From: Squalus acanthias
Lineage: Eukaryota
Assembly (NCBI GenBank): GCA_030390025.1
Contig: CM059425.1
Span: 260,896,001-260,960,000 of the forward strand
Direction of reading: 5' to 3'
Length of the DNA: 64,000 bases
In this document: in pieces, positions 23,178-62,135 of the stretch
How positions within the stretch are numbered: the first letter of the stretch is position 1
Layout: the number at the start of each line of letters is the position of its first letter
Position numbers and translations under genes: made by a program
The notes under the pieces: model-generated
Seen by the model: the letters and a program-made list of their open reading frames with translations, nothing else
Database searches by the model: none
Told to the model about the DNA's origin: nothing

Positions 23178-23779
23178 GCTTTGGGGAGTCAGGAGGTGAG
23201 ACACTCACCGCAGAATACCCAGCCTCTGACCTGGTCTTGTTGCCACAGTATTTATGTGGCTGGTCCAGTTAAGTTTCTGGTCAATGGTGACCCCCAGGAT
23301 GTTGATAGTGGGGGATTCGGTGATGGTAATGCCATTGAATATCAAGGGGAGATGGTTAGACTTTCGCTCGTTGGAGATAGTCATTGCCTGGCACTTCCGT
23401 GGCACGAATGTTACCTGCCACTTATCAGTTCCCTGAGCAAAGCACCTGGAATAATTGGCATTTCCCAACTGTCGTACTCACAGTCACCTCTGTCCCATGG
23501 CCTCTCCCACTATTCACATCATAGATAAAGCCTGGGCATTTGTACAGAATTATATTGGGAATGATCCTACGCGGATTCCATTCGAAATGACAGTGTGAAG
23601 CAGAGCCGTGCCAAATAGCTGATTAACAGGAAGAATTTTGCACTGCGGTCCAGGATCACTCAGCGAAGGATCACTATAGCAAGTACAGCTTGAATCGCTG
23701 GATGAGATTCAGTGCTGGGAGAGCGGAACAGGTTTATATTGCGGTTTGTACATTGGGTTTCTCAGCCTCCTGGGATGGA

Positions 23780-23795
23780 TCAGTCCTGCTCCTTT
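23780..23795 (-). CDS. SIGLEC15-like: Terminal coding exon (R)KEQD-stop, followed by 3' UTR
   Basis: Acceptor tcttgttttgtccacag|A in a unique island, phase 2 matching the TM exon donor; TGA at 23782-23780. Conserved in the duplicate copy. Confidence 0.6.
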
Positions 23796-26700
23796 CTGTG
23801 GACAAAACAAGACCAATTAAAATGAGCCGTGTGAACTATAAAATAAGAGCACTTTCAGCACCTCCATACACAACCAGCAGCTGTTTAAATAGCATTCCCT
23901 GCGCATTTCAAAATAGATTTGATAGCCGATTTTAATGAATACTTTGCATGTGTTTTCACAAAAGAGAGGGACGATGCAGAAATTGCAATCAGGGAGGAGG
24001 AGTGTGAAATATCGGATGAAATAAACATAGTGAAAGAGGAAGTATTAAGGGGTTTAGCATCTTTGAAGGTGGATAAATCCCAAGGCCCGGATGAAATGTA
24101 TCCCAGACTGTTAAGAGAAGTAAGAGAGGAAATAGCAGAGGCTCTGACAATCATTTTCCAATCCTCTCTGGCTACAGGTGTGGTGCCGGAGGACTGGAGG
24201 ACTGCTAACGTTGTACTCTTGTTTAAAAAGGGAGAAAGGGATAGACCGAGTAATTACAGGCCAGTCAGCCTAACCTCGGTGGTGGGAAAATTATTGGAAA
24301 AAATTCTGAGGGACAGGATAAATCTTCATTTAGAAAGACACAGATTAATCAGGGACATGAGGGAGATCATGGATTTGTTAAGGGAAGGTCGTGTCTGACT
24401 AACATGATTGAACTTTTTGAGGAGGTAACAAGGAGGGTAGATGAGTGTAGTGCATTTGATGTAGTCTATATGGATTTTAGCAAGGCTTTTGATAAGGTCC
24501 CACATGGCAGACTGGTCATGAAAGTAAAAACCCATGGGATCCAGGGCAAAGTGGCAAGTTGGATCCAAAATTGGCTCAGAGGCAGGAAACAGAGGGTAAT
24601 GGTCGAAGGGTGTTTTTGTGACTGGAAGGCTGTTTCCAGTGGGGTTCCGCAGGGATCAGTACTGGGACCTTTGCTTTTTGTGGTATATGTCAATGATTTG
24701 GACTTGAATGTAGGAAGTATGATTAAGAAGTTTGCAGATGATACAAAAATTGGCCGTGTGGTTGATAATGAAGAAGAAAGCTGTAGACTGCAGGAAGATA
24801 TCAATGGACTGGTCAGGTGGGCAGAACAGTGGCAAATGGAATTCAATCCAGAGAAGTATGAGGTAATGCATTTGGGGAGGGCTAACAAGGAAAGGGAATA
24901 CACTGTAAATGGTAGGGCACTGAGTAGTGTAGAGGAACAAAGGGACCTTGGACTGCATGTCCACAGATCCCTGAAGGTAGCAGGCCAAGTAGATAGGTGG
25001 TTAAGAAGGCATACGGAATGCTTGCCTTTATTAGCCGAGGCATAGAATATAAGAGCAGGGAGGTTGTGCTTGAACGGTATAAAATACTAGTTAGGCCACA
25101 GATAGAATACTGCGTGCAGTTCTGGTCACCACATTACAGGAAGGATGTAATTGCACGCGAGAGGTTGCAGAGGAGATTTATGAAGATGTTGCCTGGGCTG
25201 GGGAATTTTAGTTATGAGAAAAGATTGGATAGGTTGGGGTTGTTTTATTTGGAACAGAGGAGGCTGAGGGGAGACTTAATTGAGGTGTATAAAATTATGA
25301 GGGGCCTAGATCGAGTGGACAGGAAGGACCTATTTCCTTTAGCAGAGGGGTCGATAACCAGGGGGCACAGATTTAAAGTAATTGGTCGGAGGATTAGAGG
25401 GGAGTTGAGGGGAATTTTTTTCACCCAGAGTGTAGTGGGGTTCTGGAACTCACTGCCTGAAAGGGTGGTAGAGGCAGAAACTCCCATCACATTTAAAAAG
25501 TACTTGGATATGCACTTGAAGTGCCGTAACCAACAAGGCTACGGACCAAGTGCTGGAAAGTGGGATTAGGCTGGATAGCTCTTTGTCGGCAGGCATGGAC
25601 ATGATGGGCCAAATGGCCTCCTTCTGTGCTGTAAATTTCTATGATTCTATGATGATCCCAGCTGGGGCTGCAGTAGGGGCTCTCCAGTTGGTCTAAGTGA
25701 AACTGGGATAGGGAGAGGAAACATTGCCCAGGGATCCTGCTCCTGCTTGTATCCAGCAACCACTGCTGGACGTGTACTGTGTGATCATTGGCTCAACTCG
25801 GATGGCTCAGTGTTTGAATCACCTGCCAACACACACTGTCCAAGGCTCACCCATGAATCGGGCTTCAGGCATTTAAAGGCAAGAGTCTCCCAGCAATATT
25901 ACATACCTGGTTTTGTCCCTGAATAAAATGATGCACATCACGAAAAGGGCAAGGAGTTTCACTCCAAGTGGAATGCACAATATCGCAATGGGGAAAGCCT
26001 CTGCAACTGAACAGAAAGTGAGAGATCAAATCGGAGACAAATAAAGGTGAGACACCAACAATGCAGCGACAATTAATCAAAGCCTGTAGACAAGTGTGAA
26101 TCTTGACTGCAAGGCAGAAATATTGTGGTGATGGAGATGAGCTAGGCAAAGAGTATGGACTGTCAATGAAGAACGACAAATGGAGAGTACAAATAATATA
26201 GTATCTCACAGTGACGGGTTAATACTGTAGTATTTACGGTGACTAGGGTTAATACTGTAGTATATCACAATCACAGGGCTAAATATTGTAATGCTCGTAG
26301 TGAAATAAATAATTTCTGTAGTATTTAGCAAAATGGTTAAATACTGTGATGGATGAATACTGTAGTACTCAGTGACGGGGTGAATACAAGAGTACTCACA
26401 GTGACAGAGGCAAATACAAGAGTACTCACAGTGACAGAGGCAAATACAAGAGTACTCACAGTGACAGAGGCAAATACAAGAGTACTCACAGTGACAGAGG
26501 CAAATACAAGAGTACTCACAGTGACAGAGGCAAATACAAGAGTACTCACAGTGACAGAGGCAAATACAAGAGTACTCACAGTGACAGAGGCAAATACAAG
26601 AGTACTCACAGTGACAGAGGCAAATACAAGAGTACTCACAGTGACAGAGGCAAATACAAGAGTACTCACAGTGACAGAGGCAAATACAAGAGTACTCACA

Positions 26701-29700
26701 GTGACAGAGGCAAATACTATGTTGATACATCCCTGGCCTCTTATTTACTGGGCAGGTGATTGGTGGCTGGTGCGCTGGGTGAGACCACATGTACCGACCC
26801 TACGACCGGAGGAAGGGGGACCTCACCGGTTATACTGGCCCTTATAAAGGGGGCCAAGAGGGGGAATTGTTCATCGGGTGGGGTGGGGGTTAGCTCCGGC
26901 ATCTCACCCAGAACCAGCGCATTGGTCCTCTACGCAGTCTCCTTCGGCTGGAGGGCGCCTATGGTTTTACCCCATCATGTCGCGGGCACCCGCCTGTCAT
27001 GTTTAAATGGAGGACCACCCACCGACGCTGCGCATTTCAATAGAGCCCAGGGGGATTTTAGGCCCCAGTGCCCCCAAAATGGGAGCGTTTGGAAGGAACT
27101 GATGGATTCGGTCAGTTAGGAAAAAGAAGTGCTTGCATTTATATAGCGGCTTTCACAACCTCGGGACATCACAAAGCGCTTTACAGCCAATGAAGTATCT
27201 TTTGAAGTGTAGTCAGCTGTGGCTCAGTGGGTAGCACACTCGCCTCTGAGTCATGAAGGTTGTGGGTTCAAGTCCCACTCCAGGGACTTGAGCACATAAA
27301 GCTAGGCTGACGCTCCAGTGTGGTACTGAGAGAGTGCTGCACTGTCGGAGGTGCCGTCATTCAGGTGAGACCTTAAACCGAGGCCCTGTCTGCTCTCTCA
27401 GGTGGATGTAAAGGATCCCATGGCCACTATTTCAAAGAAGAGCAGGGGAGTTTTCCCTGGTGTCCTGGCTAACATAACAAAAACAGATTATCTGGTCATT
27501 ATCACATTGCTGTTTGTGGGAGCTTGCTGTGCGCAAATTGGCTGCTGAGTTTCCCACATTACAACAGTGACTGTACTTCATTGACTGTAAAGCGCTTTGG
27601 GACGTCTGGTGGTCATGAAAGGTGCTATAGAAATGCAAGTCTTTCTTTTAGTCACTGTTTTGATGTAGGGCACCAATTTGCGCACAGCAAGCTCCCACAA
27701 ACACTAATGTGATAAATGAGCAGATAATCTCTTTTTTACTTTTTTTTTGAGGGATAAATGCTGGCCAGGACACCGGGGAGCACTCACTGCTCTTCAGAAT
27801 AGTGCAGTGGGATCTTTTACATCCACCTGAGGGGGCAGATGGGGCCCCGTTTTAACGTCTCATCTGAAAAACGTCAGTACTGCACCGGGAATGCCAGCCT
27901 AGATTATAGTCAAGTGTCTGGAGTGAGATGTGACAACTCGACCTTTTGACTCAGAGGCGAGAGTGCTACCCACTGAGCCAGGCTGATGAGTGTTTTCTGT
28001 TACACCGCTGGCTCCTCACTGTACAACCTCGATACACTGGAGAATGTGGGAATGGCTTCTTACCATGTATCACCTCCAGCCGTGTCTCATTCTGGATCAG
28101 ATGTTGATAATCGTCCCATTTCTTGTACTCCACCAGACACAGGTAAGTGTGGCTGTCCTTCACGCTCAGCTGGTTTATCCTGGTTGAGGCGTTTCCCTCC
28201 TCTGGTTTCCCGACTAGCTCGTACCGATTTCCACCGTTTACAGTTGTCCAAGATCCGTTTGATTGGGCTGTAAATGTGACTACGTGTTGGTAGGGCTCCT
28301 TCCTCATCCATGTAACAGTGCTCAGGGTGGTGTAGTCGCTGGACCTTGTGAACATACAGGGCAGTGTAACCGAAGCTCCCTCGGTCCCACTCACCACTGA
28401 GACACTTCCACTAGCAGCTGAGGAAAGGACAAACATCAGAATGAGTCAGTGTCTTGATGAGAACTTTAATTTATTTTAGTTCAGAGCTCTCCCTGTGGCC
28501 TTCCTCAGAGCACAAGGCTGGTCAATGAGTGGCAATGGACTATTTGACTGTGGAGAGCATCACAGGCAGGCCCAATGTCCAAGAACACAGCTTCCAGCAG
28601 GAGTCACTGGAGCGTTATCAGGAGCAGGAACCCCGGCCAATATCCCCCCCCCCCCCCCTTCATAGCCCGGGGCTGCTGAAAGTTTATTGATCCGTGTGGC
28701 TCAGGACCGGACCAGGTGGAGCCTTTACCCATTGAGCTATCGGAGCAGCTCCAGCCCCTGAACATTGTTCCTCACCTCTCACACTCAGACTCGGAATCGT
28801 TGTCCACGGTGTTTGAAAACCGCCAATATTGAGCAGCACTCGACACCGATATTCACCGCTGTCCGCCGGGCTCAGCCGCTCCATCATTATCGAGATATCC
28901 TTGTTGCTGAGGTTCCCCACGAATCTGAATCGATTCCCGCCGTCCTGCTGTATCACATTCTCACACAGCTCGGCCCGTGAATGGTCCAGACCAGAATATG
29001 TACAGTTAAAAATAACCCGGTGAAACCCCGAGTCACCTTTGTACCACATCACAGTGCCGGTGAGCGTGCGATCAGGGTATGGGTGGGTGAAACTGCACGG
29101 CAAGACAGCGGACCCCCCTTCCTCAGCAGTCACTGCATCCGCGCCGCTCATTGTCCAACCATTGAAAGAAAACTCTGTGGGGAGAGAGAGACAACATTAG
29201 AACAGCACGGGGGCAGACATCAGTGTTTCAAAAACACACTGCCTGACAATATACTGAGTCTGTGATATAGTGACAACAGATATAAGAGGGGGGATTTTTC
29301 GGGGGTCAGCGGGCGCGTTCGGTGCCGGGTCGAGTGGGGAATTTTTTTTTCTGACAGCGGGTCGGGACCCTGCTGTCAACCCGCTGCCACCCGCCTTTCC
29401 CAGATTTCGGGTCTGTCAGGGCTGCGGAGGAGGCAATTCAGGTCATTATGATCTTGTTAACAGCCCATTAAGAAGTATTTTGAGCTCGGCTTTACATTTT
29501 ACGAAGTCGCCCAGGGAGTCCATGCTGCTCGGGGTTCACGCCAGGTAAGCAGGTAGGGAGTTGTGTTACCATGATATGATCGCTTTACTTAACAGCACCA
29601 ACAACAACACTAACCTTCTCTTAACTGATGCTGCACAGGACAGAGGACATCAGCACCCGACCACATTGCTGCCCGGGAGGCCAGGGATGGCCTCACTATG

Positions 29701-32700
29701 GCCAGATTTACTTCACTTGACTCTGAACACCCTGGCTGCCACATGATGTGCCCTGTTAGCACCATCCCACACCAACACCATAAAGCATCCCTACAATGTC
29801 CCAAGCCATTCCTTTCACACTTATTACCATTGCGGGGGGTACCGTTATGTCTCATCATTCACTGCAACTCACTAAGCCACTTCCAAAGGTGGACAGAAAT
29901 CTGTCCAAGAATGCAAAGTGTTGAAAATAAAGATTTCAATGTTTGACAGCACATTAACAGAAACTTCACACGAATATTGGCTAAAACACCCAAGTGCCTA
30001 CCCTTGTGTGTTGTTAGTTGGTATGATTGCACTAGGATGAGGGTGAGTGTGAGGGGTGCCTAGTGAGATGGGGAAGTGATAATGTAGATAGAGAGGGATG
30101 GGTGGGGGTGCAAGGTAAGTTGGTGTGAGTAAGGATGTGCAGGAGTAGGGTAAGGAAGGCAGAGTGATGGGGATGTGATGAGTGGCACAGCAGGATGAGG
30201 TTGAGTGTGGCTTGGCAGTAACATTTCGTGATCTACTGAGATCATTGAAAGGTTTGCGCCACTGCAGCCTGGTCCTCCTGACAACATCCCTGCTTGTGTC
30301 CTCCTGTACAATGTGCAACCAGGCTGCGTTGGTCTCCTGGGGAGGTGTCTTCTGCCCATGGGAAGGGAAGTTGACTTCCCTGCATGCTGTAACTCCCTCC
30401 ATAAGCATATGGAGGGAGTCACGGGAGAGCCATGCTGCGGCCTTGCACCTCTGTGCAGTGCTTGTCAGTGTTTGCAGCATCTCAATGCTGTAGAACACTG
30501 ACAGCGCAAATGTCAAAAGCAATTTGCGCATGGTCCCTTTAAGGAAACTGCCTGATGATGTGTCATCAAATGACATCATCAGACCCGCTTCCTTCAATTG
30601 GCCAGGAAATGTGCTGGGCGGGCTTAACAAGCCCAATCAGGGGGAAGTCATTCTACAGAGTGGGCTGGAGCCAGCAGCGAGGTCGGGACCCACCAGCGAC
30701 CCTGGCCGCATCGGATCCGCCGAGGTAGGGCAAATCGCGGCCAACATCACATGGTCAGATTGGGATGGTTTATACATGGATATCGGACACTGTGTAGTGA
30801 GTTACAGTCTGGAATCTAATCGAGGGGTTCAGATGGTTTATATATAGAATAATGGATACCTGGGAGTGAGTTACAGTCTGGAATCTAATCGAGGGGTTTG
30901 GGTGGTTTACTTATAGAATAATGTCTACCTGGGAGTGAGTTACAGTCTGGAATCTAATCGAGGGGTTCAGATGGTTTATTTATAGAATAATGGATACCTG
31001 GGAGTGAGTTACAGTCTGGAATCTAATCGAGGGGTTCGGGTGGTTTATTTATAGAATAATGGATACCTGGGAGTGATTTACAGTCTGGAATCTAATCGAG
31101 GGGTTCGGGTGGTTTATTTATAGAATAATGGATACCTGGGAGTGAGTTACAGTCTGGAATCTAATCGATGGGTTCGGGTGGTTTATTTATAGAATAATGG
31201 ATACCTGGGAGTGAGTTACAGTCTGGAATCTAATCGAGGGGTTTGGGTGGTTTATTTATAGAATAATGGATACCTGGGAGTGATTTACAGTCTGGAATCT
31301 AATCAAGGGGTTCGGGTGGTTTATATATAGAATAATGGATACCTGGGAGTGAGTTACAGTCTGGAATCTAATCAAGGGGTTCGGGTGGTTTATATATAGA
31401 ATAATGGATACCTGGGAGTGAGTTACAGTCTGGAATCTAATCGAGGGGTTTGGGTGGTTTATGTATAGAATAATGGATACCTGGGAGTGAGTTACAGTCT
31501 GGAATCTAATCGAGGGGTTCGGGTGGTTTATTTATAGAATAATAGATACCTGGGAGTGAGTTACAGTCTGGAATCTAATCAAGGGGTTCAGATGGTTTAT
31601 TTATAGAATAATGGATACCTGGGAGTGAGTTACTGTCTGGAATCTAATCGAGAGGTTTGGGTGGTTTATGTATAGAATAATGGATACCTGGGAGTGAGTT
31701 ACAGTCTGGAATCTAATCGAGGGGTTCGGGTGCTTTATACACAGAACATTGGAACAGGAGGAGGCCATTGAGCCCCTCGAGCCTGTTCCTCCATTCAATG
31801 AGATCATGGCTGATCCGTGACCTAACTCCATATACCCACCTTTGGCCCATATCCCTTAATACCTTTAGTTAACAAAAAGCTATCAATCATAAGAACATAA
31901 GAAATAGGAGCAGGAGTCGGCTATTTGGCCCCTCGAGCCTGCTCAGCCATTCAATAAGATCATGGCTGATCTTCTACCTCATCTCCACTTTCTTGCACTA
32001 TCCCCAAATTCCTTGATTCCCTTAATATCCAAAAATCTATCGATCTCTGTCTTGAATATACTCAATGCCAGGAGCAGAACCAGCGGACCTGAGCGGAACT
32101 GGAGTGGCAGTGGGAGCAGAATAAAGAGCACGGTGAAAGGAGGCTTGAGAGCAGAGCCAGCGGGGAGGAGCAGCGAGGCTCCGATTCAATAACAAAAAAA
32201 TCAAAGTGTGAGTAACAGGTAAGCAGGTAGGTGATTGGTGGTGAGTATTTCTTTTCTCTCAGGACTGAGGGCTAAGTTACAGTAAAGACCTATAGCATAT
32301 AACTACATTTATAACTAACTCAACTTATTTTAATAAATTTAATAAATTAAACAAGGTTATTACCTGGTTTACCTAGATTAAAAACTATAAATACACAATT
32401 CATTGATATTGATGTAATTAATTAAATAAAATACAATAGAGATGGCAGGGCAGGCGATGTGTTGCAGCTGTAACATGTGGGAGCTGGTGGACACCAGTGT
32501 GATCCAGGGCGACCACATCTGCAGTAAGTGTCTGCAGCTCGAGGAACTTCGGCTCAGAGTTGATGGGCTGGAGTCTGAGCTGCAGACATTGCGATACATC
32601 AGGGAGGGAGAAAGTTACCTGGACACTTTGTTCCAGGAGGCAGTCACACCCCTTAGGTTAAATACTTCAGATTTGGTCCGTGGTCAGAGACAGGAGGGTG

Positions 32701-35700: not shown

Positions 35701-38700
35701 GTATCAACCTCGCAAACTCAATTTCAGTACACTCTTCAGAGAGGAGTTGCAGAATTCTGGGGGGGTTTCCGGACCCTCATAATATCCAGAAGGTTACACT
35801 CTAGTTAAACTTATTAAAAGTGCTATCCGGAGGACGGTAACATCTTCAGGCCATTTCTTTCCTTTAGGGAGAGGTAATCTGACCTTTAGACCCAATTAAG
35901 CATCTCTAGGATTCAGCTACCGCTAACTTTAGTTGAAGGTGAACGTCTGGGGAATACGCCTGATCTGGGGTAGTCTGAAAGGGCTAGGACTTGTAATTAT
36001 CCCTTCAAACTAGCAAGAAATGTAAAAACAGACAATAAGAGCTTCTACAGGTATATAAAAAGGAAGAGAATAACTAAAGTAAACATTAGTCCCTTAGAAG
36101 ATGAGACTGGGGAATTAATAATGGGAAACAGGGAAATGGCAGAGACTTTGAACAAACCCCTTCATCTCCGCAATCAACCTCGTGAACCGCCTCCAATGCA
36201 AGTATATCCTTTGTTAAATGAGGAGACCAAAACTGTACGCAGTACTCCAGGTGTGGACTCACCAACGCCCTGTACAGATGTAACAAGGCTTCCCTACTTT
36301 TATACTCCACTCCCTTTGCAATAAAGTCCAACATTCCATTTGCCTTCCTAATTACTTGCTGTACCTGCATGCTGGGGAAGCTGGTTACAGAGAACGTCAG
36401 CGTATGACGTTTCATCTGTCAAAAATTTTTGACAGTTGAATTGTCATCGTTTGCTGGAAATAGTCATTGCTTGGCACTTGTGTGGCGCGAATGTTACTTG
36501 CCACTTATCAGCCCAAGCCTGAATGTCATCCAGGTCTTGTTGCATGCGGGCATAGACTGCTTCATTATCTGAGGAGTTGTGAATGGCACTGACCACTGTG
36601 CAGTCATCAGCGAACATCCCCATTTCTGATCTTATGTTGGAGGGAAGGTCATTGATGAAGCAGCTGAAGATGGTTGGGCCTAGGACACTGCGCTGAGGAA
36701 CTCCTGCAGCGATGTTCTAGGGCTGTGATGATTGACCTCCAATCACCACAACCATCTTCCTTTGTGCTAGGTATGACTCCAGCCAGTGGAGAGTTTTCCC
36801 CCCGATTCCCATTGACTTTAGTTTTACTAGGGCTCCTTCATGCCACACTCTGTCAAATGCTGCCTTGATGTCAAGGGCAGTCACCCTCACCTCGCCTCTG
36901 GAATTCAGCTGCTCTGTTCATGTTTGGACCAAGGCTGTAATGACATCAGGAGCCGAGTGGTCTTGGCGGAATCCAAACTGGGCTTCATGTGAGCAGGTTA
37001 TTGGTGAGTAAGTGCCGCTTCATAGCACTGTTGATGACACCTTCGATGATTGAGAGTAAACTGATGGGGCGGTAATTGGCCGGATTGGAACTGTCCTGCT
37101 TTTTGTGGACAGGACATAGCTGGGCAGCTTTCCACATTGTCGGATAGATGCAAGTGTTGTAGCTGTACTGGAACAGCTTGGCTAGAGGCGCGGCTATTTC
37201 TGGAGCACAAGTCTTCAGCACGATAGCCGGGATGTTATCGGGGCCCATAGCCTTTGCTGTATGCAGTGCGCTCAGCCGTTTCTTGATATCACATGGAGTG
37301 AATCGAATTGGCTGAAGACTGGCTTCTGTGATGGTGGGGACCTCAGGAGGAGGCCGATATGGATCATCCACTCGGCACTTCTGGCTGAAGATAGTTTCAA
37401 ATGCTTCAGCCTTGTCTTTTGCACTCATGTGCTGGGCTCCACCATAATTGAGGATGGGGATATTCATGGAGGCTCCTCCTCCCGTTAGTTGTTTAATTCA
37501 CGACTGGATGTGGCAGGACTGCAAAGCTTTGATCAGATCTGTTGATTGTGGGAGCGCACTTTCCGCTGTTTGCACTTGGCTTCCGTTTGCTCCCGGCGAA
37601 GAGACTCAAGGTGTTCGGCGCCTTCCCGGATGCTTCTCCTCCACTTTGTGCGGTCTTGGGCCAGGGATTCCCAGGTGTCGGTGGGGATGTTTCATTTTTT
37701 CAAGGAGGCTTTGAGGGTGTCATGGTAGCGTTTCCTCTGCCTACCTGGGGCTCTCTTGCCATGTCGGAGCTCCGAGTAGAGCGCTTGTTTTGGGAGTCTC
37801 GTATCGGGCATGCGGATGATGTGGCCCGTCCATCGGAGCTGATCGAGCATCATCAGAGCTTCGACGCTGGGGATGTTGGCCTGAGTGAGAACACTGACAT
37901 TGGTGCGCCTATCCTGCCAATGGATTTGCAGGATCTTGCGGAGGCAGCGTTGATGGTTCCTCTCCAGTGCTTTAAGGTGCCTGCTGTACATGGTCCATGT
38001 CTCTGAAGCATACAGGAGGGCGGGTATCACTACTGCTCTGTAGACCATGAGCTTAGTGCCGGGTTTGAGATCATCGTCTTCAAACACTCACTTCCTCAGG
38101 TGACCGATGGCTGCACTGGCACACTGAAGGCGATGTTGGACTTCGTCATCGACGTCTGCCCTTGTTGACAGTAGGCTCCTGTGGTATGGAAAGTGGTCCA
38201 CGTTGTCCAAGGCCTCGTCGTGGATTTTGATAATCGGGGAGCAGTACTGTGTGGCGGGGGCAGGTTGGTTGAGGACCTTTGTCTTACGGATGTTTAGTGT
38301 AAGGCCCATGCTCTCCTACGCTTTGGTGAAAGTGTTGACGATGGTTTGGAGTTCGACCTCAGTGTGTGCGCAGACGCAAGCGTCGTCTGCATACTGTAAT
38401 TTGATGACAGATGATGGGACAACTTTGGATCTGGACTGGAGGCGATGGAGGTTGAACAGTTTCCTGTTTGTTCTGTAGATTAGCTCCACTCCAGCGGGGA
38501 GCTTACTGACGGTGAGATGGAGCATTGCAGCCAGGAAGATCGAGAAGTGTGTTGGTGCGATGACACAGCCTTGCTTGACCCCGGTCCGTATGTGAATTGG
38601 GTCCGTGGTGGATCCATTGGTCAGGATCACAGCTTGCATGTTGTCGTGAAGCAGGCGGAGGATGTTGCCAAACTTTTGAGGGCAGCCGAATTTGAGGAGG

Positions 38701-41700
38701 ACACTCCATAATCCCTCACGGTTGACAGTGTCGAAGGCGTTTGTGAGATCAAAGAAGGCCATGTACAGCGGTTGGTGCTGTTCCCTGCATTTCTCTTGTA
38801 TTTGACACGCGGTGAAGATCATGTCCATTGTGCCCCTTAGTGGGCGGAATCCGCATTGTGACTCTGGGAGGAGCTCTTCAGCCACTGGGAGAAGGCGATT
38901 GAGGAGGATTCTTGCGATGGCTTTCCTTGTGGCAGACAGCATGGAAACTCCTCTGTAATTACTGCAATCGGACGTGTCACCTTTCTTGAAGATGGTCACG
39001 ATTACGACGTCTCTGAAATCTCCTGGCATGCTCTCCTCCTTTCAAATAAGAGAAATGAGTTCATGTATTCGGGCCAATAGTGCTTCTCCGCCATGCTTTA
39101 GTGCCTCGGCAGGGATTCCATCTGCTCCTGAGGCCTTGTTGTTCTTCAGTTGTCGGATGGCCTTTTCAACCTCATGCCGGGCTGTGGTTGTGCTGAGATG
39201 GTGGCGGGTAGCATGCTGCGGGATGGAGTTGAGGACACTCGCGTCAAAGACAGAGTCTCAGTTAAGGAGATCTTCGAAGTGCTCCTTCCAGCGGGCACTG
39301 ACTGCCTCTCTGTCCTTGATGAGTACCTCTCCGTTCTTGGCCCGCAGTGGGGTAGGACCTTGGGTGATTGGGCCATAGGCGGTCTTGACTGCGCTAAAGA
39401 ATCCACGCACGTTGTGGTTGTCGGCTAGCTGCTGGATCTCCTGCGCTTTCTCCGCCCACCACCTGTTCTTTAGGTCGCAAATTTTTTGTTGGACCTCGGC
39501 CTTCCGGCATCTGTAGAACTGCTTTCTTGCTCTCGAGTTGTGTTGCTGTTTCCAGATCAGGAATGCCTTGCGCTTGCGGTTTATTAGCTCCTGGCTCTCC
39601 TGGTCGTTCTCGTTGAACCAGTCTTGGTGTTTCCTGGTCAAGTGACCGAGCGTCTCTTCACAGGTGCTGATTATGGAGGTCTTGAGTGCAGACCAGGCGC
39701 TGTGGACACTCTGGGCTGGATTTTGAAACTGGAGTTGGGTTGGGGTCGGGAATCACACATTCTGGCTTGTGAACCCGCCTCCATCGAGATGTGGCCAACC
39801 CACTGTATTTTCCCTTGATTGACCTTGTTGAGCCCGCCCAGTGGGCTCAGCAGGCCAATTAAGGGCCACCCGGCAACAGGTGACATCACAGACTGACATT
39901 TCATCTGTCAAGAGCTTTTGACAGATGAAATATCAGCGTTTGACAGCTCTGTGAAGCTGTCAAACACTCACAATATGATTTCTAACTTCAGTCCTTCCTT
40001 TCAGGCTGACGTAGAAATCATTCCAGCACAGAAAACAGAAGGCTGCAGTTTTTGACAGAACCACGGCTTTCCTGCTTTCTGTGCCGGTGAGATTTCTAAC
40101 TCCCGAGAACAGAAGGGCTGACACCTGCAGGAGAAAGTTAAGGTAAGTAAAACTTTTTCCAACACTTAGCACTTACCTTACACACTTACCTCTGCACACA
40201 TGCACCCATCACTCACCTGCCCACCAGACATATCGACCCCTCCAACCCCTGCAGACACACGGCCCGCCCCGATAACTTGGTGTGGTTGCCACCTGTCAGG
40301 AAGCCCACACTTTTCTTTTTAAAATAGGGATTATGCAAAAAACTGCCTGTTAACTACCTGTTAACAGGCAGTTAATTATCACTAATCCCTTCCCGCCTTG
40401 GGGAGTCGGGTCTCAGCACAGGTTGGGTACCCGCCGCCAAAGAAACTGGCATGGAGGCGGGATGGGGTCGGGACCCCCGAATCTGCAACTTTAACCCCCC
40501 CCCCCCCCCCCCCCGCCGCCTCCAAACCCGACTCCACGGGTCATTGAAAATCCAACCCTCTGTGTCTCTGAATCACTGGGAGTCGTCAGGCTGGTTGTGA
40601 GGCGCAGGCTGAATAGGGCTTTCTTAGCAGGGTCTTTGAGTTCTCCAGCGTTGATTTTCCTGCGGCATTGCTTCTGTTGCTGCCGCTGTTTTGGGGCTAC
40701 ATTGATGGAGATGACAGAGCGAATCAGGCAGTGGTCTGTCCAGCAGTCGTTAGCTCCTGTCATGGCGCGGGTGATGTGGACGTCCTTGCGGTCCTTCGCT
40801 CGGACGATGACGTAATCCAGCAGATGCCAGGGCTTGGAGCGAGGGTTTAGCACGGTGGTAGTGCCACACAGCACGATGGAGGGTGTCCTCAGTGTGAAGA
40901 AGGGTCTTTATCTCCACAATGACTGTGCAGTGGTCACTTCTACCAATACTGTCATGGACAGATGCATCTGCGACAAGTAGATTGGGGAGGACGAGGTCAA
41001 GTAGGTTTTTCCCTTGTGTTGGTTCTCTCACCACCTGTCGCAGGCCCAGACTGGCAGTTATGTCCTTCAGGACTCAGCCAGCTCGGTCAGTAGTGGTGCT
41101 ACTGAGCCACTCTTGGTGATGGATATTGAAGTCCCCCACCCAGAGCGCATTCTGTGCCCTTGCTACTCTCAATGCTTCTTCCAATGGTTTTCCAAGCTGA
41201 TGCATCAGCTGAGGGAGGGCGGCAGGTGGTAATCAGCAGGAGGTTTCCTTGCCCATGCTTGACCTGAAGCCATGAGACTTCATGGGGTCCGGAGTCAATG
41301 TTAAGAACTCCCAGGGCCATTCCTTCCCGACTATATACCACTGTGCCACCACCCCTGGTGGGTCTGTCCTGCCGGTGGGACAGGACATACCCAGGGATGG
41401 TGATGGAGGAGTTTGGGACATTGGCTGAAAGGTATGATTCTGTGAGTATGGGCTGGATTTTGCCAGCCCTGGGGAGGCAGGTTTTGAGGCGGGACTGCCG
41501 GGAAAATGGCAGAATCTGGGGGCGGGTACCCAACCCGCCCCCAACCCGCCTACATACCATATTCCCAGGAGGCGGGCAGCCAACCCACGCCGGGTCCCGC
41601 CTCCTGGAGGCGGGGAGGGGATTACAGCCACTTATCTGCCTGTTAACAGGCAGTTAAGAGGATTATTCCCATTTTTCCAACAGAGGCGCGGGATTCCCAA

Positions 41701-44700
41701 CATCGGAATTCCCCGCCAGGGTCAGCGAGACGAGCAGTGGGTCTGCGGGGGTCGGAGGGGTGCAAAAGTGCACTGTGGAGGTAAATGATGGGTGCAAGTG
41801 TGGAGAGGTAAGTATGTGCGGTGAGTGAAAAGTGATAGAAAATGTTTACTTACCTTTGTTTCTTCCTGCAGGCTTCAACAGTTGGGGATGCGGAGACTCT
41901 CGCATCTCACCGGCAGAGATGACAGATGTCTGCTGCATTCTCCGATGCAACAGCCATCTGATTTCTGCTCACAAAAGAGGTTTGATGAGTCTTGAATACA
42001 AGGACTTGTCAAACAATAGAGAATGTCAGTGTTTGACAGCTTCACAGAGTTGTCAAATGATGACAATTCAACTGTCAAAAATTTTTGACAGATGAAATGT
42101 CATACGCTGACATTCTCTGTAACTGGCTTCCCCATAATTGGCCTGCTAAGCCCGCTGGGTGGGCTTAACAAGGTCAATCAAGGGAAAATAGCGTGGGTTG
42201 GCCACAAGTCGATGGAGGCGGGACTAAAACCCGACAAGCAGCAGTCCCGCCTCCAACGCACCCCCATTGGCAAAATCACCCCTATGACTATGTCAGGCTG
42301 TTGCTTGACTAGTCTGTGGGACAGCTCTCCTAATTTTGGCACAAGTCCCCAGATGTTGGTGCGGAGGACTTTGCAGGGTCGACTGGGCTGGGTATGCCAT
42401 TGTCCTTTCTGTAGCCGGTGCCGGCTTGGTCCTCCTTTGCTGAATTCTAAAATCCTCAGGCTCACTACTCTTTTTGGCAACATTATAAGCCTCTTCCTTT
42501 GATCTAATACAATCTTTAACTTCTCTTGTTAGCCACGGTTGGACCACTTTTCCTGTGGGGTTTTTGTGCCTTAAAGGAATGTATATTTGTTGTAAATTAT
42601 GTATTAATTCTTTAAATGCTAGCCATTGCTTGTCTACTGTCATACCTTTTAATGTAATTTCCCAATCTACCTTAGCCAACTCGCCCCTCATACCTACGTA
42701 GTTTGCTTTGTTTAGATTTAAGACCCTAGTTTCGGATTTAACTAAATTACTTTCAAGCTCAATATAACATTTTATTATATTATGGTCATTCTTCCCTAAA
42801 GGCCCCTTTACGGCAAGGTTATTAATTAACCCTTTCTCATTGCACAATACTAAATCTAAAATAACCTGTTCCCTAGTTGGTTCCTCAACATACTGATCTA
42901 GAAAACTATCTTGCATACATTCCATGAATTCGTCCGTCACACTATTACTGCAAATTTGGTTTGCCCAGTCTATATGTAGATTAAAGTCCCCCATGATTAC
43001 TGTATTACCCTTGCTACATGCACCTCTAATTTCCTGATTTATACTCTGCCCTACATTATAACTACTGTTTGGGGGCCTATAAATAACTCCCACCAATGTT
43101 TTCTGCCCCTTGCTGTTTCTTAGCTCTACCCAAACTGATTCTACTTCTTCATTTTCGGAGTTAAGATCCTTTTGCTCTACTGTCTTTATCCCATCCTTTA
43201 TTATCAGGGCTACCCCCTCCTCCTTTTCCATCTTGACTATCTCTTCTAAAAGTTAAGTATCCTTGAATATTTCGTTCCTAACCTTGGCCACATTGCAACC
43301 ACGTGTAAGGTTTCCAAAATTTGCAGATCCCCAAAACCTAAGGAAAAAGGACTTTGGAACTACCTCAGAGTGATAAAATGCATTTGGGCCTAACATAAGG
43401 AATTTAAGACCAAAAACCAAGTTTTGGCATTTTAAAAGACATGTCTGGACCTGTGAGGGAGAAAAGGCTGCACAGGAGGTGGGTTCGACCTCTGTAAAAG
43501 CAGTTTTGGGTATTGCAGTTAAATTGCATTGTCTGGGGAATCGGGATGACCTCACTCAAGCCCCAGCAAGCATTAACATTTGGACAATAGACCCTGGGAG
43601 AAGGCAGCCCCACCCAAAACACAGGCCCCATTAAAACCTATCACAGACCCATCAAAACCATGCATAATTCAAATCGCTCAGGACCATTCTATAGAAAAAC
43701 CCGAGTCCAGCCTAGAAACCCAAAACACGAAACCAATCACCTGTAATCAACCGAAGAGATCGACAGGACGCAAGCCATTTGACACTTAGTAAAGTTGTTA
43801 CTGTTAACGAGGTCTTACAATGACCGGGATTTGATTTGGTTTTGATAAGGCCACTTCAATTTAGTATAATTGAAGGCCCATCAAGCAGTTACAACAGTTC
43901 AAGTTCTCCAGTAAAACAGTTCAAGTTAAACAGAATTGAAAGCCTGTGTTGAACAGAAGTCAGGGCTGCAGTTACAGAAGCAGGCAGAAGGCAGTTTCCA
44001 CAGTTCTGCAAGAAGGCAGTTTCCACAGTTCTGCAAGAAGGCAGTTCCACAGCTCGGAAGAAGACAGTTTAAACAGAGGCAGAGTTACAGCAAGAAGTTA
44101 AACAAAGAAGGCCAACAGCTTCACAAGCAGACCGACACGCAAGAAGAAACCAGAGCGACTGCCTCAGTGACCATCGGACACCTCTCGGCAACAAGGGCCT
44201 TACGAAACCTTTTACTCAAAAGACTCTAAACCCTAACTCTCAACTGTCAAGGATTCGTTTGGTGAGCATTATCCCTGGTTCTCCAGAGTCCAACCTAGCT
44301 AGTGAAGTGGGATTGGGAGGGGTGAAGTATTCTTCTAATGTTATTTCCCTCGCTTGTACCGAAGTGTTCCCCAGCTTTAGAGTGATAAGAGTGTTTGTGT
44401 TGTGTTTTACTTCCTTGAATAAAAGTCAAAGTTCTTTCATCAAACCTGTTGTCTACTGCAACTTTGTTCACGACCCCTAAATAAGTCCAAGATCTAGAAC
44501 CAGGGGCGTGGGAGCGATTCGAACCGCTCACTGAGTCAGAGGTGAGGCTGACCCCCGCTCACCACCCCCTACACACGTCTTTGTAATGGCTATTAGATCA
44601 AACCTATTAATTTCCATCTGCGCTATTAATTCATCTATTTTGTTGCGAATGCTTCGTACAGTCAGATATAGTCCCTTTAGCTTTGACTTATTTCTGTTTT

Positions 44701-45964
44701 TCCCTGATGTCACCTTAGTCACTGGTCCTTTATTAGCTTTGTTACTCTCTCTGTCCCTTCCTGACCCACTCTGCTTATTTTTACCCAAAACTCTACTCTG
44801 CTCACGAGCCTTGACATGTCTCTCGTTGCTTTTAAATTTACTCTTTCCTGAATCCTCCTATCCAAGGACAAGAGATTTAAATTGAATGTATGATGGGATG
44901 GGGAGCCAGAAAAGGTCGGGGGGTGATCCTCACGAGCAGACAAAGAAGACTGGCAGGAAGAGACCAGCTGGCACCTTCGGGGATGAAGAGGAGACAGAGA
45001 ATAATCACTTCTCCCAGACAGCTGCCTACACCAGCTCTTGGCTCCCTCTGCCACATCCAGTATCTCCACCACCCTTGATTTCCCCAGCCAAACAATGGCT
45101 AACCACGCTACAGGACAGGTTGAAAAATTAATCAAAGAGGCTAATGGCATATTCGCCTTCATATTGAGAGGGCTAGAATATAAAAGGGAAGCAGCTTTGC
45201 TACAGCTATACAAAGCTCTGGTTAGACCGCATAATGTGTACAGTTCTGGGCACCACACATAAGAGAGGACATATTGGCCTTGGAAAGAGTGCAGTGCAGT
45301 TTCACCAGAATGTTACCAGGTCTCCAAGGGTTAGATTATGAGGAGAGATTACATAATCTAGGCTTGTAGTCCCTTGGATGTAGAAGGTTAAAGGGTGATT
45401 TGATTGAGGTTTTTAAGACATTGAAAGGAATTGATAGGGTAGATAGAGAGATATTTTTTCACTGGTGGGGGAGTCTAGGACAAGGGGACATAAACTCACA
45501 TTCAGAGCCAGGCGTTTCACCAGAGAAGTTAGGAAACACTTCTTCACGCAAAGTGTGGAACTCTCTGCTGTAAAAAGCTCAAGAAATAATTTTAAATCTG
45601 AGATCGATAGATTTTTGCTAGCCAAGGGTATTAAGGGATATGGAGCCAAGGCGATAAGATACAGATCACCATGATCTCAATGGATGGCAGAACAGGCTCG
45701 AGGGGCTGAATGGCCTCCCCCTGTTCCCATGTTTCTTGTGTCTCGCTAGAAACCAGACGCTCACTCTAACCCTCCCTGTTTCTCTGACTCTGACCGTCGC
45801 CGCTCTGGACTTTCACCCACTCACAACCCTGCGGTGAAATGATAAAAAGGAGCAGTTTGTGCAACAAAATGAATTTGAACAGTAGTTATTGGAAAGCACC
45901 TACTGTAACCCCGCACCGAGACCGACAGCAGGACTGCGGAAAGCCAAACGTAGAGAGAATTCAT
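23780..45964 (-). CDS. SIGLEC15-like: Spliced gene for a Siglec-15-like type I membrane receptor (signal peptide, V-set, V-set, TM with Lys, short tail), ~309 aa. Exons 45964-45904, 29174-28776, 28417-28064, 26006-25907, 23795-23780
   Basis: Exons are bounded by AG/GT with polypyrimidine tracts and chain in phase (1,1,1,2) with no internal stop: 61+399+354+100+16=930 nt. V1 (GWTMSGADAVTAEEGGSAVLPCSFTHP...IFNC...AELC...RFRFVGNLSNKDISIMMERLSPADSGEYRCRV) closely follows the Siglec-15 V domain as I recall it (WSMQV...AVLPCTFTHP...VFRC...SELC...RFRLLGN...DLSLRVERL...YFCRV). Confidence 0.8.
23915..25652 (+). mobile_element. CR1 LINE (RT to 3' end) in the last intron of the Siglec-like gene
   Basis: RT motifs [10 protein letters not shown] and KFADDTKIG; ttctatgattctatga tail. 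Confidence 0.9.
25907..26006 (-). CDS. SIGLEC15-like: Transmembrane exon (V)AEAFPIAILCIPLGVKLLALFVMCIILFRDKT
   Basis: Not in the ORF track; read by hand. Acceptor ctcactttctgttcag|TT, donor CCAG|GTATGT, 100 nt, phase 1-2. Hydrophobic helix with a central Lys, followed by basic stop-transfer residues. Confidence 0.85.
26383..26716. repeat. Perfect 30-bp minisatellite (aatacaagagtactcacagtgacagaggca) x~11, degenerate copies back to ~26205
   Basis: Direct inspection. Confidence 0.97.
27120..27983 (-). mobile_element. Older copy of the same SINE in opposite orientation, host of the 27216-27648 copy
   Basis: Reverse-complement head gctacccactgagcca and core gggatcttttacatccacctgag. Confidence 0.75.
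27216..27648 (+). mobile_element. Deu-domain tRNA SINE (SacSINE1-like) with TAGTCA TSD
   Basis: A-box tggctcagtgg, B-box gggttcaagtccc, Deu core ctcaggtggatgtaaaggatcccatggc; TSD at 27210-27215 and 27649-27654. Confidence 0.85.
28064..28417 (-). CDS. SIGLEC15-like: Ig V-set domain 2 exon
   Basis: Acceptor tttgtcctttcctcag|CT, donor CATG|GTAAGA, 354 nt, phase 1-1. Motifs VTLPC...VTW...DSHTYLC with long V-type Cys spacing; G-strand NETRLEV. Confidence 0.92.
28776..29174 (-). CDS. SIGLEC15-like: Ig V-set domain 1 exon (Siglec-15-like sialic-acid-binding domain)
   Basis: Acceptor ctctctctccccacag|AG, donor AGAG|GTGAGG, 399 nt, phase 1-1. B-strand LPC, C-strand W (VMWY), F-strand DSGEYRCR, and an extra Cys pair (FNC...ELC). 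Confidence 0.92.
29288..30742 (-). mobile_element. Non-autonomous Harbinger-like DNA transposon with decayed Myb/SANT-like ORF
   Basis: ORF 29998-30636 contains SRDSLHMLMEGV...AAWLHI...RRTRLQWRKPFNDL, a Harbinger-associated Myb-like trihelix; boundaries approximate. Confidence 0.6.
30797..31738. repeat. 69-bp minisatellite, ~13.6 copies
   Basis: Unit gtgagttacagtctggaatctaatcgaggggttcgggtggtttatttatagaataatggatacctggga, first units at 30797 and 30866. Confidence 0.97.
32066..36152 (+). mobile_element. CR1 LINE 5' half (5' UTR, ORF1 zinc finger/leucine zipper/esterase, ORF2 endonuclease), interrupted by a solo LTR
   Basis: ORF 32442-33146 MAGQAMCCSC...HICSKC...LIGDSIVR; decayed APE downstream; flanked by minus-strand CR1 pieces. 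Confidence 0.9.
34560..36007 (+). mobile_element. Solo LTR (1448 bp), TG...CA, 4-bp TSD AACT
   Basis: Interrupts CR1 at gagtaaact|...|aactagcaag. Termini tgtaatgggataa / ttatcccttca; internal TATAAAA and AATAAA. Confidence 0.85.
36460..37550 (-). mobile_element. CR1/L2-group LINE RT fragment
   Basis: KAMGPDNIPAIVLKTCAPE...NYRPISLLS motif. Confidence 0.85.
37553..40835 (-). mobile_element. RTE LINE (decayed EN-RT), interrupted by a MITE at 39713-40558
   Basis: HLLDYVIVR, NYRGVSML, ESQCGFR, GVKQGCVIAP and LQYADD motifs. Confidence 0.9.
39713..40558. mobile_element. Harbinger-like MITE, 3-bp TSD TCT
   Basis: TIRs gggctggatttt / aaaatccaaccc; flanks TCT...TCT. Confidence 0.85.
41450..42282. 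mobile_element. Harbinger-like MITE, 3-bp TSD TAT, related to 39713-40558 in inverted orientation
   Basis: TIRs gggctggattttgcc / ggcaaaatcacccc; flanks TAT...TAT; internal palindrome ctgtcaaaaatttttgacag. Confidence 0.85.
42424..44880 (-). mobile_element. CR1 LINE ORF2 endonuclease region, split by a solo LTR
   Basis: ORF 42293-43231 has GVIYRPPN...MGDFN; ORF 44528-44788 has RSIRNKIDEL. Confidence 0.85.
43304..44573 (+). mobile_element. Solo LTR (1270 bp), TG...CA, 4-bp TSD CACG
   Basis: caaccacg|tgtaagg ... ccctaca|cacgtc; AATAAA near 44418; internal short tandem repeats at ~43990-44060. Confidence 0.85.
45105..45740 (+). mobile_element. CR1 LINE 3' fragment
   Basis: LYKALVRPH and RTRGH motifs; CR1 3' stem-loop/tail. 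Confidence 0.85.
45904..45964 (-). CDS. SIGLEC15-like: Leader (signal peptide) exon MNSLYVWLSAVLLSVSVRGY
   Basis: ATG at 45964 in a non-repetitive island, then a hydrophobic stretch. Phase-1 donor ACA|GTAGGT is compatible with the V1 exon. An alternative donor TCG|GTGCGG (exon end 45917) plus a 34-nt exon 45828-45795 is also in frame. Confidence 0.65.
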
Positions 45965-46039
45965 CGCCAGATCTTCGGTGTTCCGTCCTTCTCCCTCGCT
46001 GCTTTTTGTCTCCTGACACCGAAATACAGAAGTTGCTCG

Positions 46040-62000: not shown

Positions 62001-62016
62001 TCAGTCCTGCTCCTTT
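62001..62016 (-). CDS. Terminal coding exon of a paralogous Siglec-15-like gene whose upstream exons lie beyond the window
   Basis: Same acceptor and (R)KEQD* coding sequence as 23780-23795, inside the duplicated block. Confidence 0.55.
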
Positions 62017-62135
62017 CTGTGGACAAAACAAGACCAATTAAAATGAGCCGTGTGAACTATAAAATAAGAGCACTTTCAGCACCTCCATCCACAACCAGCG
62101 GCTGTTTAAATAGCATTCCCTGCGCATTTCAAAAT

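What the first reader, a model, noticed from the sequence alone, without database searches (positions are those of the whole stretch)
23780..45964. Intact Siglec-15-like receptor gene with a non-canonical V-V ectodomain, buried in TE debris
Seen: five phase-compatible exons give a stop-free ~309-aa protein (leader, two V-set domains, TM, short tail); the leader, TM and last exons are missing from the ORF track. Known: mammalian Siglec-15 is V+C2 with a TM Lys, and canonical Siglecs have one N-terminal V domain followed by C2 domains. Here V1 follows Siglec-15 motif by motif, but domain 2 is a second V-set domain and I found no C2 exon. Inference: a Siglec-15-related immune receptor subfamily with tandem V domains in a probable cartilaginous fish, possibly undescribed.
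Basis: partly seen in the sequence, partly recalled or inferred. Interest (0 to 1): 0.9.

Follow-up and report, generated by a model that had tools for sequence, protein, structure and literature searches.

The report
Shark Siglec-15-like receptor with two V domains
This is a real, intact shark gene for a small cell-surface immune receptor related to Siglec-15, with two variable-type domains and a charged membrane anchor; it belongs to a large, unnamed receptor family of sharks and rays that computer annotation already holds.

Summary
The five-exon, minus-strand gene is real. Both large exons are V-set domains by Pfam. V1 matches human Siglec-15 far better than any other solved protein and keeps its sialic-acid arginine, tryptophan and four cysteines. 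V2 is an arginine-less V domain. The membrane exon carries the PLGxK lysine motif of Siglec-15, and the tail is nine residues long.

Contigs of public runs join V1 to V2, V2 to the membrane exon, and that exon to the last exon, at GT..AG sites. They use a membrane-exon acceptor 6 bases downstream of the longer option, which gives 305 aa. The leader-to-V1 join is inferred only. The contigs differ from the window in V1, so they may come from alleles or from the tandem copy.

The gene is not unique. Sharks, rays and skates hold dozens of public models of this family, both lysine-bearing and ITIM-bearing, under inconsistent automatic names. Chimaera, manta and lungfish Siglec-15-type proteins are V-V-C2, so this subfamily is set apart by lacking C2, not by having two V domains. 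Five literature searches found no paper describing it.

Verdict: first reading supported; a new variant of a known kind; moderate interest.

The parts
45910..45964 (-). Exon 1, coding part: ATG plus signal peptide MNSLYVWLSAVLLSVSVR, and 1 base of the next codon (phase 1). The donor is G|GTTACA.
   Evidence: It matches the N-terminus of Heterodontus P0227 at 17 of 18 residues and P0003 at 16 of 18. It is the only leader-like match in the window. Its join to V1 is inferred and was not seen.
29175..45909 (-). Intron 1, 16.7 kb, filled with transposon remains and a 69-bp minisatellite.
   Evidence: RVT_1 at 38319-39029 and an endonuclease domain at 42296-43231. Tandem repeat at 30796-31738.
28776..29174 (-). 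Exon 2: the V1 domain, 399 nt, phase 1 in and out. It keeps W6, C26, C57, C70, C110 and R111, which align to human Siglec-15 W44, C64, C95, C104, C142 and R143.
   Evidence: Contigs stop fitting exactly at 29174 and then run on for 195 and 374 further letters; the joint 28776|28417 is seen.
28064..28417 (-). Exon 3: the V2 domain, 354 nt, phase 1 in and out. It is V-set, with Leu where V1 has the Arg, and it lacks the extra cysteine pair.
   Evidence: Contigs of 348 and 256 nt lie on it with 0 differences.
25907..26000 (-). Exon 4: stalk, membrane span with Lys (AFPIAILCIPLGVKLLALFVMCIILF) and RDKT. The acceptor seen in contigs is at 26000. An in-frame alternative lies 6 nt upstream, at 26006.
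   Evidence: Joints 26000|28064 (3 of 4 runs) and 23795|25907 (4 of 4 runs). 84% identical to Heterodontus P0227 and P0231.
23780..23795 (-). Exon 5, coding part: completes Arg, then KEQD and the TGA stop. The 3' UTR continues below 23780.
   Evidence: Heterodontus P0231 has the same ...RKEQD end.
62001..62016 (-). Coding part of the last exon of a second, tandem gene copy. Its other exons lie beyond the window's end.
   Evidence: 22566-25787 matches 60796-64000 at 97.8%, and 131 nt around the exon are identical. Earlier notes place its V exons 3.6-4.3 kb beyond the window (not checked by me).

Best explanation
This is an intact gene of an elasmobranch multigene family derived from Siglec-15 stock. 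It encodes a type I membrane protein of about 305 aa with these parts:
- a signal peptide;
- a Siglec-15-like V domain that keeps the sialic-acid arginine;
- a second, arginine-less V domain;
- no C2 domain;
- a membrane span with a central lysine in the Siglec-15 PLGxK motif;
- a nine-residue tail without tyrosine.

Shown here: the exons, their domain classes, their nearest relatives, the splicing of exons 2-5 in near-identical transcripts, and the existence of lysine-bearing and ITIM-bearing relatives.

Inferred: V1 binds a sialylated or similar ligand through the arginine face. The lysine pairs with an aspartate of a DAP12/DAP10-type adaptor, which signals activation. This gene is then the activating partner of inhibitory family members. 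The family is evolving fast at the ligand face.
For: - Exon anatomy and phases.
- Pfam V-set for both domains.
- V1 against solved structures: Siglec-15 at E 6.8e-15, next hit 1.6e-5. As a profile: 3.2e-20, next 2.9e-11.
- V2-only profile: Siglec-15 V domain on top at 2.9e-9.
- Arg, Trp and four Cys align to R143, W44, C64/C142 and C95/C104 (residue roles from passages of PMC10264397).
- The membrane lysine motif is shared with bird and lungfish Siglec-15. The roles of the lysine and of R143 come from passages of PMC7226832.
- GT..AG joints 28417|28776, 26000|28064 and 23795|25907 are seen, and one 949-nt contig spans V1-V2-TM-tail.
- Tree of 61 V domains: V1 sits in a family clade of 17 rows (100/99) and V2 in one of 11 rows (100/100). 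Chondrichthyan first domains are sister to the Siglec-15 V domains of bony vertebrates.
- Of 86 public models, 9 have a lysine span with a short tail and 38 have an uncharged span with ITIM-like motifs.
- 21 of 22 listed V1 differences are nonsynonymous.
Against: - The leader-to-V1 join was not seen, and its donor (GTTACA) is weak.
- None of the four runs shows the window's own letters at 9 V1 places. The transcripts may therefore come from alleles or from the tandem copy, and expression of this exact copy is not shown.
- The runs are only guessed to be RNA. The spliced joints and the empty intron bins argue that they are.
- No ligand, adaptor or cell type was tested.
- Zebrafish Siglec-15 bound the tested glycans poorly, according to a passage of PMC7226832.
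- Ray and skate activating members have lost the arginine, so sialic-acid binding is not a family constant.
- The counts are inflated by isoforms.
Confidence: 0.78

Rival explanations
1. It is the shark orthologue of Siglec-15 itself, in which a second V domain simply replaced the C2 domain.
For: V1 and the membrane exon both match Siglec-15 best. [quoted passage not shown]
Against: Cartilaginous fishes also hold V-V-C2-TM(Lys) proteins (Callorhinchus P0027, Mobula P0035). Their C2 and membrane parts align colinearly with bird Siglec-15. In the tree these fall outside the C2-less family, which forms its own elasmobranch clades. The family has at least 10 loci in one shark species and includes inhibitory members, whereas the Siglec-15 described in the passages I read is an activating receptor. 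That Siglec-15 is single-copy in mammals is my recollection, not a result of any call.
Confidence: 0.1
2. It is a silent or decaying duplicate, and the transcripts seen come only from the neighbouring copy or other paralogues.
For: No contig shows the window's V1 haplotype at 9 places. A second copy with an identical last exon lies about 38 kb upstream. The leader donor is weak.
Against: All exons are open, and the four acceptors and the other three donors are standard. Contigs of two runs match the window's V2 with 0 differences. Contigs of run X1 carry the window's letter at every listed variable place of V2, the membrane exon and the 3' UTR; those of X4 do so at all but one, 23755. Contigs also drop rarer variants, by the tool's own note.
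Confidence: 0.1
3. It belongs to the CD300/TREM/pIgR/MDIR-type or TIM-type V-set receptors, and the Siglec-15 likeness is superficial.
For: V2 alone scores about the same against TIM-1 (35.4 bits), the Siglec-15 V domain (35.0) and pIgR (34.5). NCBI auto-names some members pIgR-like, JAML-like or A33-like.
Against: V1 scores 30 bits above any non-Siglec-15 chain. The V2 family profile puts Siglec-15 on top. CD300 and TREM are absent from the 60 rows shown in all four searches. V1 and V2 are each other's kin (32% identity, E 7e-13). The membrane motif matches Siglec-15.
Confidence: 0.02

Closest known systems
Siglec-15 of mammals, birds and bony fishes
   Same: The N-terminal V domain has the arginine, the tryptophan and two disulfide pairs at aligned places. 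The membrane lysine lies in a PLGxK-like motif and the tail is short. Activation through DAP12/DAP10 is expected; this is an inference from passages of PMC10264397 and PMC7226832.
   Different: The second domain is V-set, not C2-set, and there is no C2 exon. The gene belongs to a multi-copy family with inhibitory members. It lies in an elasmobranch-only clade.
V-V-C2-TM(Lys) 'Siglec-15' models of chimaera, manta and lungfish (P0027, P0035, P0021)
   Same: Two V domains in tandem. In the cartilaginous fishes the second is of the same arginine-less V2 type. Both have a lysine in the membrane span.
   Different: They keep the membrane-proximal Ig_3/I-set-type domain that this gene lacks. The two V domains of lungfish are both of the V1 type.
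Public models of the same family, e.g. [quoted passage not shown]
   Same: The same leader-V1-V2-TM(Lys)-short-tail architecture. P0231 ends in the same ...RKEQD. Identity: V1 about 71%, V2 77-79%, membrane exon 84%.
   Different: They come from other species. Ray and skate members have Ser in place of the arginine. These are computer predictions; I found no study of them.
Paired activating/inhibitory receptor families (CD33-related Siglecs such as Siglec-5/14; recalled, not tested here)
   Same: Similar ectodomains are coupled either to a charged membrane span or to ITIM-like tails, and nonsynonymous change is concentrated near the ligand face.
   Different: They derive from a different Siglec lineage and have V plus C2 ectodomains. 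No pairing partner has been identified for this gene.

Membership tests
Siglec-15 (orthologue) | N-terminal V-set domain closest to the Siglec-15 V domain | tested here: met
   7zoz_A tops the list at E 6.8e-15 and at 3.2e-20 with a family profile.
Siglec-15 (orthologue) | Arginine on strand F (human R143) that binds the sialic acid carboxylate | tested here: met
   V1 R111 aligns to R143 (numbering checked against W44, C64 and C142 in passages of PMC10264397). 32 of 43 V1-type rows have Arg.
Siglec-15 (orthologue) | Disulfide pairs C64-C142 and C95-C104 | tested here: met
   V1 C26/C110 and C57/C70 align to them. The bonds themselves are not shown.
Siglec-15 (orthologue) | Membrane-proximal C2-set domain | tested here: not met
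   Domain 2 is V-set. There is no C2 exon. V2 is spliced directly to the membrane exon.
Siglec-15 (orthologue) | Lysine within the membrane span | tested here: met
   IPLGVKLLALFVM, compared with bird VPLGIKVLILLV and lungfish ALGIKLLLF.
Siglec-15 (orthologue) | One-to-one orthology | tested here: not met
   It sits in an elasmobranch-only clade beside the V-V-C2 genes of cartilaginous fishes. It is multi-copy. Synteny was not tested.
Siglec-15 (orthologue) | Association with DAP12/DAP10, and sialoglycan binding | not testable with these tools
   Needs experiments.
Elasmobranch V1-V2 Siglec-15-like family (unnamed) | V1 and V2 each fall in the family's clades | tested here: met
   17-row clade at 100/99 and 11-row clade at 100/100.
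Elasmobranch V1-V2 Siglec-15-like family (unnamed) | Conserved leader, and a membrane exon of the lysine type | tested here: met
   Leader 17 of 18 and membrane exon 84% identical to Heterodontus models.
Pfam V-set (domain 2) | Score above the curated cut-off over the whole model, with C'-C'' region present | tested here: met
   58.5 bits against a cut-off of 26, covering profile positions 5-108 of 109; I-set 13.1 bits against 23.7. 73 residues lie between the two cysteines. It aligns through the C'-C'' part of Siglec-15.
CD300/TREM/pIgR/MDIR-type receptors | V domain closest to these families | tested here: not met
   CD300 and TREM are absent from the 60 rows shown. pIgR ranks below Siglec-15 and is absent from the rows shown.

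The most novel reading that the evidence does not exclude
Sharks and rays built their own fast-evolving family of paired activating and inhibitory receptors out of Siglec-15, a counterpart of the mammalian CD33-related Siglecs. A V1-V2 cassette arose at or before the base of cartilaginous fishes, the C2 domain was then dropped, and the arginine face of V1 has diversified under pathogen pressure. The lysine-bearing members, such as this gene, would act as decoy-resistant activating partners. If the V1/V2 split is older than the split between cartilaginous and bony fishes, the ancestral Siglec-15 itself was V-V-C2 and land vertebrates lost one V domain.
Probability: 0.35. Interest if true: 0.65.

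Novelty: new variant of a known kind. Interest (0 to 1): 0.45.

Why it matters
In the papers I read, Siglec-15 is treated as a conserved V-plus-C2 activating receptor. Here its V domain and its lysine-bearing membrane span appear in a different setting: a V-V ectodomain without C2, in a family with many copies and with inhibitory as well as activating tails, spread across sharks, rays and skates.

This gives comparative immunologists three things:
- a candidate innate paired-receptor system in the oldest jawed vertebrates;
- a natural test of what the C2 domain and a second V domain do;
- a handle on how Siglec-15 arose.

It is not a new principle. The gene models are already public under inconsistent automatic names, so the value lies in recognising and naming the family, not in this single locus.

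Tried and rejected
- **Other membrane exon.** A hydrophobic stretch at about 27737 (IICSFITLVFVGACCAQIGAL) was rejected. It runs into a stop, has no splice frame, and lies in a repeat with contig depth in the tens of thousands.
- **Stronger leader donor.** The donor CAG|GTAGGT lies 7 nt past the modelled one. It was rejected because it leaves phase 2, and no AG acceptor at V1 fits that phase.
- **First V2 profile.** This alignment mixed full-length rows, so the profile (323 positions) also modelled V1. Its top hit says nothing about V2. I repeated the search with V2-only rows.
- **Short-protein searches.** Searches with single exons see only proteins of 0.55 to 1.75 times the query length. They returned 5 of 12 and 6 of 11 candidates, all shark fragments.
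- **Inhibitory or C2 exons in the window.** tblastn used the tails of P0152, P0005, P0003 and P0013 and the C2-plus-tail parts of P0026 and P0027. It found only the known membrane exon.
- **Literature.** No paper on a shark or ray Siglec-15-like V-V family turned up. I read passages, not whole texts, of PMC10264397, PMC8455134 and PMC7226832. All other papers I saw only as listings. Subscription journals are not covered, and supplements were not opened and may hold gene lists.
- **Rooting the V1/V2 split.** This was not possible, because the tree has no outgroup. It fits a duplication in the stem of cartilaginous fishes and an older duplication equally well.
- **Not used.** The protein-atlas search, the Rfam tools and the DNA collections; none bears on a vertebrate gene.
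Full report
**What is in the sequence**

Two minus-strand open frames, at 28684-29151 and 27966-28436, stand out in the ORF list. Read on the minus strand, each is bounded by a pyrimidine-rich tract with AG upstream and by GT downstream.

Coordinates were fixed with short anchors. The model is:
- Leader: 45964-45910. It encodes MNSLYVWLSAVLLSVSVR plus one base. The donor is G|GTTACA.
- V1: 29174-28776, 399 nt.
- V2: 28417-28064, 354 nt.
- Membrane exon: ends at 25907, with two in-frame acceptors at 26006 and 26000.
- Last exon: its coding part is 23795-23780. It completes an Arg and adds KEQD and a stop.

The phases are 1, 1, 1 and 2, and no junction codon is a stop. The product is 307 aa with the acceptor at 26006, or 305 aa with the one at 26000. 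The window holds no N. Every search used single exons or public proteins.

**Domain classes**

Pfam calls both large exons V-set. V1 scores 47 bits and V2 58.5 bits, against a cut-off of 26. V2 covers positions 5-108 of the 109-position model. I-set scores are below its cut-off for both.

The two cysteines of V2 lie 73 residues apart. V1 and V2 are 32% identical to each other over 100 residues, E 7e-13.

No further Ig exon was found:
- tblastn with the four exon peptides finds only themselves and the V1/V2 cross-match.
- None of the 15 stop-free minus-strand stretches of 60 aa or more between 23700 and 28064 looks Ig-like. I judged this by eye and did not scan them.
- The C2-plus-tail parts of two relatives find nothing in the window.

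The introns hold reverse-transcriptase and endonuclease remains (3 of the 10 ORFs scanned) and two minisatellites. 'Buried in TE debris' is therefore fair.

**Which family**

Against all solved structures, V1's best match is human Siglec-15 (7zoz_A) at E 6.8e-15 and 58 bits. TIM-3 and sialoadhesin follow at 28 bits. A profile of seven V1-only sequences raises Siglec-15 to 75 bits, with the next hit at 46.

In the printed alignment, six V1 residues fall on named residues of human Siglec-15:
- W6 on W44.
- C26 and C110 on C64 and C142.
- C57 and C70 on C95 and C104.
- R111 on R143.

Passages of PMC10264397 describe these as a sialic-acid contact, the two disulfides and the essential arginine.

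V2 alone scores about equally against TIM-1, the Siglec-15 V domain and pIgR, at 35 bits each. A V2-only profile puts the Siglec-15 V domain first, at 40 bits, aligned to chain residues 33-146. That is the V domain, not the second domain. CD300 and TREM appear in none of the four lists of 60 rows.

The membrane exon reads IPLGVKLLALFVM. Bird Siglec-15 reads VPLGIKVLILLV and lungfish ALGIKLLLF. Passages of PMC7226832 say this lysine mediates DAP10/DAP12 binding and is conserved from fish to mammals.

**Relatives**

A full HMMER scan with V1 found 314 proteins at E 0.001 or better, 15 of them at 1e-30 or better. The best are RefSeq models from Heterodontus, Heptranchias, Mustelus, Narcine, Rhinoraja, Leucoraja and Hemitrygon, all 'uncharacterized protein'. 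Mammalian and avian Siglec-15 follow at about 57-63 bits.

A search with the V2 part of a Mustelus model gave 49 proteins among 71 candidates, all from sharks or the ray Narcine. Of these, 35 are unnamed. The other 14 are auto-named: Siglec-15 (5), Siglec-12 (1), Siglec-10 (1), pIgR-like (3), JAML-like (2) and A33-like (2). Ten different LOC numbers belong to Hemiscyllium ocellatum alone.

The nearest full-length matches are:
- Heterodontus P0231 and P0227: V1 about 71%, V2 77-79%, membrane exon 84%; the leader matches P0227 at 17 of 18. P0231 ends in the same ...RKEQD.
- Pristiophorus P0234: V2 81%.

Of 86 family models, many of them isoforms:
- 9 have a lysine span with a short tail;
- 38 have an uncharged span with ITIM-like motifs;
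- 14 are mixed, and 6 of these have the lysine with a longer predicted tail;
- 25 have no membrane span.

**Two V domains are older than this family**

Callorhinchus P0027 and Mobula P0035 have two V-set stretches, then an Ig_3/I-set-type domain, then a lysine-bearing span. Lungfish P0021 has the same layout. Bird and mammal Siglec-15 have one V domain plus that domain. Heterodontus P0231 and Rhinoraja P0008 have two V domains and nothing more. The second V, the C2 and the membrane span of Callorhinchus align colinearly with bird Siglec-15.

I built a tree of 61 V domains. Four of the seven lungfish repeats were left out to lighten it, and it has no outgroup from outside this kinship. It splits at 100/99 as follows:
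- A V2-type clade of 22 rows, all of them second or later domains of cartilaginous fishes.
- A V1-type clade of 39 rows. In it, the first domains of cartilaginous fishes (25 rows, 93/90) are sister to the Siglec-15 V domains of bony vertebrates (14 rows, 85/70).

The C2-less family forms its own clades for V1 (17 rows) and V2 (11 rows). The unrooted tree fits either a V1/V2 duplication in the stem of cartilaginous fishes or an older one.

The arginine is present in 32 of 43 V1-type rows and in 0 of 22 V2-type rows. The extra cysteine pair is likewise of the V1 type only. Ray and skate activating members have Ser at the arginine place.

**Transcripts**

Thirteen runs hold part of 28064-29174. 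Eight of them hold 27-45% of the sampled words. None is on record as RNA; that kind is a guess.

Contigs of four runs were laid on 23700-29300. They show three joints, all GT..AG on the minus strand:
- 28417|28776, in 3 of 4 runs.
- 26000|28064, in 3 of 4 runs.
- 23795|25907, in 4 of 4 runs.

One 949-nt contig spans V1, V2, the membrane exon and the last exon. Intron bins 26505-27065 are empty in all four runs, and in three of them from 26131, while repeat bins reach tens of thousands. The material is therefore spliced RNA.

The acceptor in use is 26000, 6 nt downstream of the longer option. The Mustelus model P0216 reads the longer form.

Two contigs stop fitting exactly at 29174 and run on for 195 and 374 letters that lie outside the stretch laid. 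An upstream exon therefore exists, but its identity was not seen.

**Caveat on which copy is expressed**

V2 contigs match the window with 0-4 differences. V1 contigs differ at 5-27 places. At 9 V1 places, no run shows the window's letter.

A tandem copy lies upstream. The stretch 22566-25787 matches 60796-64000 at 97.8%, and the copy's last exon, at 62016-62001, is identical. Earlier notes of this scan place its V exons just beyond the window.

The junctions therefore hold for this gene or for near-identical alleles or paralogues. Expression of this exact copy is not shown.

Of the 22 V1 differences listed, 21 are nonsynonymous when taken singly. The one silent change lies in the arginine codon. 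Eleven fall in codons 107-123, which cover strand F to strand G. The table lists only the best-supported differences (18 of the 27 in one contig), so this is not a dN/dS estimate.

**How it probably works**

This part is inference. V1 presents a Siglec-type arginine face to a sialylated or related ligand, and V2 raises it from the membrane in place of C2. The lysine pairs with the aspartate of a DAP12/DAP10-type adaptor. The tyrosine-free tail leaves signalling to that adaptor. ITIM-bearing relatives with similar ectodomains would oppose it. None of this was tested.

**Verdict**

- The membrane-exon acceptor seen in transcripts is 26000.
- Two V domains are shared with the V-V-C2 Siglec-15-type genes of cartilaginous fishes, so the mark of this subfamily is the lost C2.
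- The family is already in public annotation under inconsistent automatic names.

Five literature searches found no description of it. Supplements were not opened.

Noticed in passing
window 17294-25787 and 57569-64000: A tandem segmental duplication. 17294-20545 matches 57569-60800 at 96.6%, and 22566-25787 matches 60796-64000 at 97.8%. The 3' end of a second gene copy therefore lies inside the window, with its last exon at 62016-62001.
   Followed up: partly
window 23735-23795 (last exon): Public models of other sharks read this exon in three frames. One is ...RKEQD (Heterodontus P0231; Mustelus P0216 runs on to RKEQDRPNAGS). The second is ...RSRTDPSQEAEK.NVQTAI: V2 is spliced straight to the last exon in Heptranchias P0004 and Pristiophorus P0234, a likely soluble form. 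The third is used in Cetorhinus P0217. In the window, the second frame is also open down to a TAA.
   Followed up: partly
window 28776-29174: 21 of 22 listed differences between RNA contigs and the window in V1 change the amino acid, and 11 of them lie in codons 107-123 beside the arginine. At least three haplotypes are present across the four runs.
   Followed up: partly
P0008, P0023 (related proteins): Skate and ray members with the lysine span have Ser where this gene and most V1 domains have the sialic-acid arginine.
   Followed up: no
window 26383-26717 and 30796-31738: A perfect 30-bp minisatellite (11.2 copies) in intron 3, and a 69-bp one (13.7 copies, 94% matches) in intron 1.
   Followed up: no
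window 27066-28000 and 24400-25760: Repeats whose contig depth in the four runs reaches thousands to about 200,000. These look like abundantly transcribed interspersed elements. One abuts the V2 donor side.
   Followed up: no
window 45965-46075: The frame upstream of the ATG stays open for 37 codons. It loosely resembles the N-terminal extension of Heterodontus P0231, which suggests a conserved 5' UTR.
   Followed up: no
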